From Ylistrum balloti (lineage: Eukaryota), in NCBI RefSeq assembly GCF_031769215.1, contig NW_026782376.1:682001-746000 (forward strand): DNA of 64,000 bases, in the 5' to 3' direction. Positions 55,701-61,422 of the stretch are shown here, one piece after another (position 1 is the stretch's first letter; each line of letters begins with the position of its first letter). The translations under genes were made by a program, and so were the position numbers. Under the pieces are notes generated by a model. That model had not been told where the DNA came from, searched no databases, and was given only the letters and a program-made list of their open reading frames with translations.

Positions 55701-58700
55701 ATTCTGAGATAATGATATATGTGTCCTAATAAACTTATGTTGTACATAATATTAAATAACTTCAATTATACTGGTGTTTTATGAATACACACAAAAGTGA
55801 CGTTTTCCACTTTCATCAATAAATCTCAGACAACCAGTGCCCAGATTGAAATCTTCTATTGTTTTCTTTTTCTCCTTGGAAATGCATTTTCCAGAAATTT
55901 TTCATGGTAAAGCTAAATACCTAAGAAAACTTTGGTATAGAGATACCTTTATAAACATTGTGATGGTGATGATATACTTACCTAAAGTCATAGGTATATG
56001 GTCGCAGTATATATCTTCAAATATCAGCGGAACAGTTAGGCTGTCGCCATCCATCTCTGTACACTCTACACTCAGTGCTGGAATGCTGCGGAAATATTGT
56101 GACTCGCGTACCATGTTAGCCATATCAGCATGGCCATGGTAGCTACACAGGAAAAAGGTGGATTGTAATCAGTCAAAACTATTTACAATTTGCTTTAACT
56201 TAAGAAAAAAGGGAAAGAAAAAACATCCAGTGAATTTTTGTGATTTCCAATTAAACTTTATTTTTGTTCTTTTAAAATCTCCATGATGTTAAGGTTAATG
56301 AAGTTTGACAGCACATCATTTTTAAGGAACAGAAACTTTGAAAACACTTACCTTGGTTCATAGCAAGAGAGGCATTCAGGTTTTGGATAATCATGAGTGA
56401 AAAAACCTTCAGCAAATCGTTTTACCTACAAAGAATAAGAAAAAAAGAAATTCATTATCAAACTGGCTACAGTAGTGAGATTTTCAAATAAAACTTTTGC
56501 AGGTAGACAGCTGCAGCTGTTGTATGTATATCCTGAATACAAAAAAAGTGATTTTTAATCAACACAATTGACCATTCCTTCTGAATTTTAATTCTTTTGA
56601 TATTTTTATGCCTCATATATCTCTAAAAAAGTTTCAGGAAGACTTCTCTTTAGCGAAGAAAGAAAGAATTTCAGTAGGGCAGCATGAATAAACAACCATT
56701 ACACCATTACACCTCATTTATACCTACTTCCAGTCTCTGCATCCTCCCCTGCCCCAACTTCCCTTCCCTCCTGTTCTATATACCCCTCCCCTCCTTATCC
56801 CTCAGCATTCATGTCACCTGTCTTCCCTATTTCATCCAACAAGTCTGGAGTTACCCACACAAAGCTCAGTTTACATACCCTGGCTGAGTGGTGCTCCTTA
56901 GCCAGATAGTGCATCACAGACTGATCAAGGGAGACAATCTCCAAGAACTGCGTCCACAGAATCACATTTTCGGCACACAGCTGTGTGATGTCTGTAGTGG
57001 CTGTCTGCAGGAGGTCCTCCTCATTGTCAAAATTCTGATCAACATACAATGAATATATCTCAAATTTTAAGCACGAGACCATTTTATGTTAAAAGGACAA
57101 CCACTTCATACAAAGTGTGTCTACTCAAGTATAAAACCACAAATATTTATTCATACACATACAAGTGTCATATGCAAAATACCAAATAATTTTAACCTTA
57201 ATTAATTAAAGCTTACCTTTAAATCTCCAAACATGATTTTTTTTCTCAGAACTACTGATGCAAGAAATGATATTGTAGTCTGTTGTAGATATGCTGCTAA
57301 AATTATTTGCAAGTGATTTTTCTTTCTGGTATTTTAAAGAATTGAACTATTTGCATCAGAAATGATAATAAGGCAGTCTAAATTTTGATACAGAACACTT
57401 ACCTGTAAATTATTAACTAAGGTCTCTAGCCATACATGACAATTCTTCTGTTCTATAAAACAAATCATAAAACAGTGTCAAAAGTAATAAGTTTGTGTTT
57501 TCTAAAGTATACGGTAAGCCATTCACTATATAAACTAATACATTATCCGAAATGACAAACATTTCTTTTAAGACATTTTCACAGTAGTTAAATTGGTTGA
57601 AATAACATCGGTTCATCAAAGTTTCTCTTTGTAGAAACTTATTTCCCATGAATTATGACTTTTCTATTCCTAGTTAAATTGTGAATTCATTCCTGTATGT
57701 GTTTACATCCATCAGAAAGAAAAAGAAAAAAAAATGTGGTGCATGACTTTTTCCACTCATTTGGGAAATGTGAATGAAACTTAAAGGAGTAAGATATATC
57801 TTTGGAATGTGGCCATATTATGAAATAACCACAATTGGGAATAGGAAAGAGCCCTGTGGTGTTAATGGACGAAGATTCACAAGTATGGAAACTCAATGCT
57901 AGCTACCATATACCCAGTTAATGAAGACGCATAATATCAAATTACCGAGTTTGAACTGTGATCCTGAGATTTTCGAGAGATACAGCTGAAATGTGGACTG
58001 TAGAGATTCAAAGGTGGACAGTAGAATGGTACACAGCTTCTTATGTACATTGTAGGCATTGTGCATCTTGATGGTATCACTAAACACAGGCTCCTGTAAA
58101 AAAACAAAAACTACATCTCACATTGTGCATCTTGATGGTATCACTAAACACAGGCTCTTGTAGAAAAACAAAAACTAAATCTTACATTGTGCATCTTGAT
58201 GGTATCACTAAACACAGGCTCCTGTAGAAAAACAAAAACTAAATCTCACATTGTGCATCTTGATAGTATCATTAAACACAGGAAAACAAAAACTAAATTT
58301 CAAATTGTGCATCTTGCAGGTTTACATTAAATACTGATCCTGTAAAAAAAAAAAAAAAAAACTCCATCTCACATTGTGCATCTTGATGGTATCACTAAAC
58401 ACAGGCTCCTGTAGAAAAACAAAAACTAAATCTCACATTGTGCATCTTGATAGTATCATTAAACACAGGCTCCTGTAAAAAAACAAAAACTAAATTTCAA
58501 ATTGTGCATCTTGCAGGTATCATTAAATACTGATCCTGTAAAAAAAAAACAAAAACTCCATCTCACATTGTGCATCTTGATGGTATCACTAAGCACAGGC
58601 TCCTGTAGAAAAACAACAACTAAATCTCACATTGTGCATCTTGATGGTATCAGTAAACACAGGTTCCTGTAAAGTAACAAACAAAAATCATAACTAACAT

Positions 58701-61422: not shown

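What the first reader, a model, noticed from the sequence alone, without database searches (positions are those of the whole stretch)
58058..58734. Array of ten 36-nt, phase-0 micro-exon candidates ([12 protein letters not shown] variants) upstream of a FAM135 exon
Seen on the - strand: each unit is polypyrimidine-CAG, then 36 nt, then GT(G/A)AGA, and the GT donor is absent from the real exon (aat|gcctac). Six copies keep both AG and GT: 58186-58221, 58373-58408 (both [12 protein letters not shown]), 58437-58472 ([12 protein letters not shown]), 58567-58602 ([12 protein letters not shown]), 58631-58666 ([12 protein letters not shown]) and 58699-58734 ([12 protein letters not shown], gttagt donor). 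All are stop-free and frame-preserving between the phase-0 neighbours. Spacers of about 28 nt are probably too short to splice, so adjacent copies would be mutually exclusive. Inference: a combinatorial micro-exon cassette, loosely like schistosome micro-exon genes, or a set of decoy acceptors.
Basis: partly seen in the sequence, partly recalled or inferred. Interest (0 to 1): 0.85.

Follow-up and report, generated by a model that had tools for sequence, protein, structure and literature searches.

The report
Splice-acceptor minisatellite in scallop FAM135A
An intron of the saucer scallop's FAM135A-like gene ends in ten extra tandem copies of its own 3' splice site plus the first 36 bases of the next exon; this is a young "mirage" minisatellite, a kind already known, and nothing so far shows that the copies are used as exons.

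Summary
On the minus strand, 58057-58739 is a 64-bp tandem array (10.7 copies). Each unit is 28 nt of intron tail plus the first 36 nt of exon 7 of a FAM135A-like gene of Ylistrum balloti. Six of the ten extra units keep AG, an open 36-nt frame and a GT; four are broken.

The micro-exon cassette reading is not supported, though no RNA data could be obtained to test it directly.
- The array is absent from the orthologous intron of Mizuhopecten and Argopecten.
- The annotated Ylistrum protein and all homologues examined carry one copy of [12 protein letters not shown].
- The pseudo-donors are weak: 2.4-5.4 bits against a median of 10 for the gene's real donors.
- Spacers are 28 nt; the gene's shortest intron is 87 nt.
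- Unit turnover is typical of a minisatellite, with diverged edge units and a duplicated three-unit block.
- Coding constraint on the copies is not significant (7 nonsynonymous, 4 synonymous changes).

This matches the "mirage" minisatellites of amphioxus, which include an acceptor-side case, and is the acceptor-side counterpart of the human F7 intron 7 repeat. The scan has already noted many such arrays elsewhere in this genome. Verdict: a new member of a known kind, most likely a tolerated by-product of local duplication; occasional splicing into it remains untested.

The parts
58057..58739 (-). 64-bp junction-spanning minisatellite: 10 extra units plus the authentic exon start
   Evidence: TRF period 64, 10.7 copies, score 829. 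Units listed in register and aligned with an identity matrix.
57946..58093 (-). Authentic exon 7 of the FAM135A-like gene (148 nt, phase 0 to phase 1). Its first 36 nt are the source of the repeat.
   Evidence: Exact mapping of annotated protein P0059 on L001, which is 100% identical to the window. Translation.
60390..60477 (-). Exon 6 (88 nt, ends in phase 0, donor GGG|gtaagt)
58094..60389 (-). Intron 6 (2296 nt). It holds the array at its 3' end and two high-copy dispersed repeats. The orthologous intron is about 0.65-0.8 kb in Argopecten and Mizuhopecten.
   Evidence: X1 depth is 14557 at 58892-59078 and 6423 at 60014-60200.
58699..58734 (-). Unit 1 pseudo-exon [12 protein letters not shown] (cag before, gttagt after). 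The most diverged unit, 50-70% identical to the others.
58631..58666 (-). Unit 2 pseudo-exon [12 protein letters not shown] (AG and gtgaga)
58567..58602 (-). Unit 3 pseudo-exon [12 protein letters not shown] (AG and gtgaga)
58501..58536 (-). Unit 4, broken: register shifted by 1 nt, ttgaaa instead of GT
58437..58472 (-). Unit 5 pseudo-exon [12 protein letters not shown] (AG and gtgaga)
58373..58408 (-). Unit 6 pseudo-exon [12 protein letters not shown] (AG and gtgaga). The whole 64-nt unit is 100% identical to unit 9.
58304..58339 (-). Unit 7, broken: in-frame TAA, ttgaaa instead of GT. A copy of unit 4 (92% identical).
58250..58285 (-). Unit 8, broken: acceptor and the first bases deleted. 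A copy of unit 5.
58186..58221 (-). Unit 9 pseudo-exon [12 protein letters not shown] (AG and gtaaga, the best pseudo-donor at 5.4 bits)
58122..58157 (-). Unit 10, broken: caa instead of cag. So the nearest intact competing acceptor lies 128 nt upstream of the authentic one.

Best explanation
This is a lineage-specific 'mirage' minisatellite. A 64-bp segment spanning the 3' splice site of intron 6 (28 nt of intron tail plus the first 36 nt of exon 7) of the Ylistrum balloti FAM135A-like gene was duplicated in tandem. It was then expanded and reshuffled by ordinary minisatellite processes such as slippage or unequal exchange. The whole array lies inside intron 6. The mRNA is made by joining exon 6 to the last acceptor, at 58093. 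That is the only acceptor followed by a full-size exon (148 nt) and a real donor. The upstream copies are pseudo-exons that are mostly skipped: at 36 nt they are short, their GT sites are weak, and neighbours are only 28 nt apart. Rare use of an upstream acceptor would have one of two outcomes. It would add 12 residues in frame, if the copy's own GT is also used. Otherwise it would run into a stop within 5-47 codons and probably be degraded. Shown: the structure, its local origin, its absence from two other genera, the single-copy protein models, and the weak donors. Inferred: which acceptor the spliceosome uses and why, and the neutrality of the array.
For: The window is 100% identical to the Y. 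balloti assembly locus L001. The protein annotated there (P0059) reads ...GSKTISG|[12 protein letters not shown]|AYNVHKK, with one copy. Mizuhopecten (L002) and Argopecten (L003) have a single copy of the junction at the orthologous place. Their proteins and seven more distant homologues also have one copy-equivalent in this linker. Unit pattern: the edge units are diverged (u01 50-70%, u02 61-82%), the core units are 89-100% identical, and the block u04-u06 is duplicated as u07-u09. The same turnover is described for the amphioxus BflGb6 mirage (PMC3087553). Four of ten copies are disabled by at least three independent events. On a matrix built from the gene's own 20 introns, the pseudo-donors score 2.4-5.4 bits against a real-donor median of 10.0, and 14% of all intronic GTs score at least 2.4. 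Changes in the six intact copies are 7 nonsynonymous to 4 synonymous, not significantly different from neutral (P=0.10). The authentic 36 nt shows 0 to 3 across three genera. A random unit boundary gives a GT about 7% of the time and a 3n exon part one time in three, so one such in-frame array is expected among the many acceptor-side arrays noted in this genome. In amphioxus, RT-PCR showed that mirages do not disturb regular splicing (PMC3087553; PMC3902484).
Against: No RNA evidence for this species could be obtained, so silence of the copies is inferred, not shown. The decoy acceptors are as strong as the authentic one or stronger (5.5-13.5 against 7.2 bits), and they lie closer to the exon 6 donor. 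A simple proximity or first-AG rule would therefore favour them. Six copies keeping AG, frame and GT is compatible with weak selection. The 7:4 ratio leans slightly towards constraint (P=0.10). The annotated model may rest on protein homology rather than on transcripts.
Confidence: 0.75

Rival explanations
1. Exonization in progress: one or more of the six intact copies are included as alternative in-frame 36-nt exons. Non-adjacent copies would be separated by introns of at least 92 nt. The result would be FAM135A isoforms with 12, 24 or more extra residues in the linker after the DUF3657 domain.
For: Six units have CAG, an open 36-nt frame and GT, and both neighbouring exons are phase 0. The acceptors are copies of a working acceptor and score 5.5-12.8 bits. 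The insert would fall in a linker that varies among homologues just after DUF3657 at residues 112-173. Ebner et al. proposed exactly this route from mirage repeats to new exons and introns (PMC3087553).
Against: There is no transcript or protein model with more than one copy. The donors are weak. The array is absent from two other genera. Forty percent of copies are broken. There is no significant coding constraint. Exons of 36 nt are generally poorly defined without dedicated enhancers (established knowledge, not tested here).
Confidence: 0.12
2. Regulatory decoys: the extra acceptors divert part of the pre-mRNA into stop-containing transcripts that are degraded, or they bind and hold 3' splice site factors. 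Either way they would tune FAM135A output.
For: Read-through from any decoy acceptor meets a stop within 5-47 codons. Two units (58304-58339, 58501-58536) have strong AG sites but no GT.
Against: The array is not conserved in other scallops. Similar arrays sit in many unrelated genes of this genome, which points to a mutational process rather than gene-specific regulation. There is no expression data.
Confidence: 0.06
3. Assembly artefact: the array, or its copy number, was produced by misassembly of a shorter repeat.
For: Short-read contigs of X1 break at the array edge (58086), and reads fit several registers.
Against: The units differ from one another in a structured way: an edge gradient and a three-unit higher-order block. 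X1 contigs cover both edges, and summed depth over the array is about twice that of the flanks. Only the exact copy number remains uncertain.
Confidence: 0.03

Closest known systems
Amphioxus 'mirage' minisatellites (Adh3, globins BflGb6 and BflGb9, TnC, PGBD5)
   Same: Tandem duplications of an intron-exon boundary, so that AG/GT signals are multiplied. BflGb6 is the same acceptor-side type (3' end of the intron plus the 5' part of the exon). It shows 81-100% unit identity, concerted evolution in the core, and edge units excluded from homogenization. Regular splicing is kept (PMC3087553; PMC3902484).
   Different: The organism is a bivalve mollusc, not a cephalochordate. The unit is 64 bp, against 150-160 bp in BflGb6. 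Here the exonic part is a multiple of 3 and the unit start happens to supply a GT, so each unit looks like a complete in-frame exon. Splicing was not tested here.
Human F7 intron 7 37-bp VNTR
   Same: A minisatellite whose terminal element spans the exon-intron boundary. The authentic splice site therefore stands beside identical pseudo-sites, which are functional in principle but normally silent (PMC1557585).
   Different: F7 multiplies the 5' splice site and the first site is chosen by 5'-to-3' scanning. Here the 3' splice site is multiplied and the annotated site is the last one, so a different selection rule must apply.
Other splice-junction arrays in the same genome (USP5, BBS8, TATDN3, DIABLO, SLC7, BAG6 and others, from the scan's own notes)
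   Same: Same genome and same architecture. In several of them the productive acceptor is the last of many tandem copies. Two donor-side arrays lie in this same gene.
   Different: Those are unchecked notes on other loci. This array has few copies and is the case in which the copies are in frame and carry a GT.
Schistosome micro-exon genes (MEGs)
   Same: Short symmetric exon-like units whose length is a multiple of 3 and which could, in principle, be combined.
   Different: MEGs encode secreted proteins, and their short exons are interspersed with long introns of up to 5 kb (PMC10526429). Here the spacers are 28 nt, the gene is a conserved 1240-residue DUF3657/DUF676 protein with ordinary exons, and no combinatorial transcripts are known.

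Membership tests
Mirage (splice-junction) minisatellite | Head-to-tail tandem array of minisatellite-size units | tested here: met
   Period 64, 10.7 copies, score 829
Mirage (splice-junction) minisatellite | The unit spans an exon-intron boundary of the host gene, so splice signals are multiplied | tested here: met
   Unit = 28 nt of intron tail with ...acag plus the first 36 nt of exon 7
Mirage (splice-junction) minisatellite | The authentic junction is the terminal unit of the array | tested here: met
   The last unit, 58093-58058, continues into the unique part of exon 7
Mirage (splice-junction) minisatellite | Regular splicing is retained (mRNA carries one copy) | tested here: inconclusive
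   The annotated protein P0059 and all homologues have one copy, but no RNA data of this species could be laid on the locus
Mirage (splice-junction) minisatellite | Minisatellite turnover: concerted evolution in the core, diverged edges, length instability | tested here: met
   Identity matrix and the duplicated three-unit block. The array is absent from two other genera. Copy-number polymorphism itself could not be resolved.
Schistosome-type micro-exon gene | Short exons separated by long, spliceable introns | tested here: not met
   Spacers are 28 nt, against a shortest intron of 87 nt in this gene. Definition from PMC10526429.
Schistosome-type micro-exon gene | Encodes a small secreted protein built mostly from micro-exons | tested here: not met
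   1240-residue FAM135A-like protein with DUF3657 and DUF676, and 21 exons of 50-1106 nt
Schistosome-type micro-exon gene | Transcripts show combinatorial inclusion of the micro-exons | not testable with these tools
   No RNA run of the species was served, and no transcript fragment was found in the protein collection
Conserved alternative micro-exon (functional cassette exon) | Exon and its splice sites conserved in related species | tested here: not met
   There is a single junction copy in Mizuhopecten and Argopecten

The most novel reading that the evidence does not exclude
The array is caught in the act of making new exons. Some of the six intact 36-nt copies would be spliced in at appreciable levels, giving FAM135A isoforms with a variable number of 12-residue linker repeats. 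If so, mirage minisatellites would be a live source of new in-frame exons and introns in scallops. It would also give a natural test system for how the spliceosome chooses among near-identical tandem 3' splice sites.
Probability: 0.1. Interest if true: 0.6.

Novelty: new member of a known kind. Interest (0 to 1): 0.27.

Why it matters
On its own this is one more splice-junction minisatellite in a genome where the scan has already noted dozens, and the kind has been described in amphioxus and in human F7. Two things give it modest value. First, it is an acceptor-side array whose units happen to be complete, in-frame pseudo-exons, so it is a ready-made natural substrate for testing the proposed route from junction duplication to new exons and introns. 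Second, the annotated site is the last of about eight usable, equally strong acceptors. That asks how 3' splice sites are chosen when sequence cannot tell them apart. It also warns annotators that such arrays can mislead gene prediction and read mapping.

Tried and rejected
1. RNA evidence. The look-up of sequencing runs with 50100-58800 returned a single run, X1, of unknown kind. Laid on 55900-61500, its contigs are colinear with introns, so it is DNA and shows no splice joints.
2. Transcript-derived protein fragments. The search with P0059:140-320 found only distant fragments (59-86% identity over 23-33% of the query), none from Ylistrum and none across the exon 6/7 joint. The full-length searches gave only single-copy models.
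3. X1 shows C>T at 58094, which would turn the authentic cag into caa. I rejected this as evidence, because the same base distinguishes unit 10 (58158) and 123 contigs fit two registers. It is most likely a contig of unit 10 laid one unit off.
4. Whether the GT at the unit start predates the array. The Mizuhopecten intron tail has ...cgtatgtattttgtg... at about the same place, but the alignment beyond about 23 nt upstream of the exon is unreliable. This is left open.
5. Exact exon mapping of P0056 and P0057 on L002 and L003 failed with my script, so the splice-site matrix rests on only the 20 introns of the Ylistrum gene and is rough.
6. Pfam on the single exons gave nothing.
7. The original mirage paper (Canestro et al. 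2002, PMC117041) is not held. It is cited second-hand through PMC3087553.

Full report
**What is there**

Read on the minus strand, 58739-58057 is a tandem array with a 64-nt period. It has 10.7 copies, 80% matches and a TRF score of 829, with higher-order periods of 194 and 251. Put in register, it has 11 units. Each unit is a 28-nt stretch, gtgagatttagtttttgtttttctacag, followed by 36 nt, GAGCCTGTGTTTAGTGATACCATCAAGATGCACAAT ([12 protein letters not shown]). The last 36-mer (58093-58058) runs on into unique coding sequence ([20 protein letters not shown]...), so it is the start of a real exon.

The other four are broken:
- The 58122-58157 copy has caa instead of cag.
- The 58250-58285 copy lost its acceptor by a deletion of about 10 nt.
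- The 58304-58339 copy has ttgaaa instead of GT and an in-frame TAA.
- The 58501-58536 copy has ttgaaa instead of GT and a 1-nt shift.

**Gene and organism**

The large open frame at 50121-51830 and the surrounding exons match FAM135A-like proteins of molluscs. The best match is the Ylistrum balloti protein P0059. Its genomic locus L001 (GCA_031769215.1) is 100% identical to the window over 2621 nt, so the window is that assembly.

I mapped P0059 exactly onto L001 and found 21 exons:
- Exon 6 is window 60477-60390 and ends in phase 0, since exons 1-6 sum to 633 nt.
- Exon 7 is window 58093-57946.
- Intron 6 is 2296 nt and ends with the array.

The annotated protein reads ...[12 protein letters not shown]|[12 protein letters not shown]|AYNVHKK..., with one copy. 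The repeated peptide lies in a linker just after the DUF3657 domain (residues 112-173).

**Comparison with relatives**

In Mizuhopecten yessoensis (L002) and Argopecten irradians (L003), the orthologous junction is present once, and the intron is only about 0.65-0.8 kb. The array therefore arose in the Ylistrum lineage.

Across the three genera, the authentic 36 nt differ by three synonymous changes and no replacement change. All ten aligned homologues, from scallops to a brachiopod, have a single copy-equivalent in this linker. Protein searches returned no model or fragment with a repeated [12 protein letters not shown].

**Internal evolution of the array**

The first unit is 50-70% identical to the others and the second 61-82%. 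The core units are 89-100% identical. Units 4-5-6 reappear as units 7-8-9 at 92%, 84% and 100% identity. Diverged edges, a homogenized core and block duplications are the usual behaviour of a minisatellite. The same pattern is described for the acceptor-side mirage array of the amphioxus globin gene BflGb6 (PMC3087553).

The six intact copies carry 7 replacement and 4 silent changes relative to the exon. About 83% replacement changes would be expected by chance, so this is not significantly different from neutral (P=0.10). At least three independent events have disabled four copies.

**Splice-site quality**

I built a position weight matrix from the gene's own 20 introns. It is rough, because it rests on only 20 sites.

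| Site class | Score (bits) |
|---|---|
| Authentic exon 7 acceptor | 7.2 |
| Array acceptors with an AG in register (seven copies; the unit 4 AG is shifted by 1 nt and is not counted) | 5.5-13.5 |
| Array pseudo-donor AAT\|gtgaga | 2.4 |
| Array pseudo-donor gttagt | 4.0 |
| Array pseudo-donor gtaaga | 5.4 |
| Real donors of the gene (median) | 10.0 |

The acceptors are thus as good as the authentic one. The pseudo-donors are poor, and 14% of all intronic GTs in the gene score 2.4 or more.

The 28-nt spacers are far below the gene's shortest intron (87 nt; all others are at least 200 nt). If a decoy acceptor were used without its GT, translation would stop within 5-47 codons.

**Is the in-frame, GT-bearing layout more than chance?**

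The open frame comes free, because the 36 nt are copied from a real reading frame. A unit boundary falls on a GT at about 7% of intronic positions, and on a GT scoring at least 2.4 bits at about 1.5%. The exonic part is a multiple of three one time in three. That gives roughly 0.5-2% per acceptor-side array. The scan's own notes list 15 findings matching an acceptor/tandem/exon word search in this genome alone (eight shown), and the true number is surely larger. One array of this layout is therefore unsurprising.

**RNA evidence**

None could be obtained. The run search returned a single run. Its contigs follow the introns, so it is DNA from another haplotype or individual, with about 1.3% differences. 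It confirms the array's flanks and an excess of depth over the array, but it says nothing about splicing. One apparent variant, 58094 C>T, is best explained by a contig of unit 10 laid one unit off.

**Most likely explanation (about 0.75)**

This is a young, lineage-specific mirage minisatellite produced by tandem duplication of the 3' splice junction and by ordinary array turnover. It is tolerated because the cell still joins exon 6 to the last acceptor.

Why the last one wins is inferred, not shown:
- Only the last acceptor is followed by a normal-size exon with its own donor.
- The copies are 36-nt units bounded by weak GTs.
- The copy immediately upstream has lost its AG.

Low-level noise splicing into the array is quite possible and would be either in frame (+12 residues) or stop-containing.

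**Rivals**

- Real alternative micro-exons, or exonization in progress: about 0.12.
- Regulatory decoys that feed nonsense-mediated decay: about 0.06.
- Assembly artefact: about 0.03.

**Comparison with what is known**

[quoted passage not shown] BflGb6 is the same acceptor-side type.
- Those authors already proposed that the exonic part of a unit could become a real exon.
- The human F7 intron 7 37-bp repeat is the donor-side counterpart, with functional but silent pseudo-sites (PMC1557585).
- It is not a schistosome-type micro-exon gene. Those have long introns between their short exons and encode secreted proteins (PMC10526429).
- The scan has found the same kind of array many times on other DNA of this genome.

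**Verdict**

This is a real structure, a new member of a known kind, and probably without function of its own. Its modest interest is as a natural test case for 3' splice-site choice and for exon birth.

Noticed in passing
window 45050-46035 (- strand): A 66-bp array of 15.4 copies made from the 3' end of exon 19 plus its donor (..AAAGCTG|gtaagtcacc), giving about 15 GTAAGT sites. Mizuhopecten has a 73-bp array with GGGTAAGT at the equivalent exon, where protein residues 1113-1135 hit twice (L002 30611-33138).
   Followed up: partly
window 42686-44398 (- strand); L003 31577-33011: A 46-bp array of 37 copies starts in the end of exon 20 (GAGAAAGCTCAGGTATGGGG...). Argopecten has a 45-bp array of 32 copies at the same exon end (GAGAAAGCTCAGGAATGGGTAAGT), so this donor-side array is either old or recurrent.
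   Followed up: partly
L003 11367-11552: Argopecten has a 62-bp array of 3 copies starting 13 nt inside exon 11305-11379 (..GAACCAAAGTAAGAAG). Ylistrum has no counterpart. In Ylistrum, 3 of the 8 distinct arrays inside the gene span a junction, against roughly 9% each expected from random placement (my estimate).
   Followed up: partly
window 58892-59078 and 60014-60200: Two stretches of intron 6 have summed contig depths of 14557 and 6423 in run X1 against about 10 in the flanks. They are high-copy dispersed repeats, presumably transposable elements. The second overlaps the 156-bp repeat at 59908-60292.
   Followed up: no
window 41037-42414 (- strand): A 102-bp array in two blocks of 6.6-6.8 copies, 94-96% identical, fills the last intron and ends about 38 nt before the last exon without including the junction.
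   Followed up: no
window 63372-64000 and beyond (L001 3907-6008): A 30-bp array of about 70 copies lies in intron 3 of the same gene and runs off the window. A 62-bp array of 3.3 copies lies at 62215-62421.
   Followed up: no
window 55957-56142 and 50585-51777 (L001 13238-13423, 17603-18795): The annotated model P0059 uses two very poor donors, AAT|gtttat and ATA|gtgtaa. The second removes an 87-nt piece from inside the large open exon. These may be annotation compromises rather than real introns.
   Followed up: no
window 5706-6077 (+ strand): An open frame containing ..GPWDPWGPCTRNGQTCGYTYG.. looks like a thrombospondin type-1 repeat exon of a neighbouring gene. This rests only on the ORF list and my recollection of the motif.
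   Followed up: no
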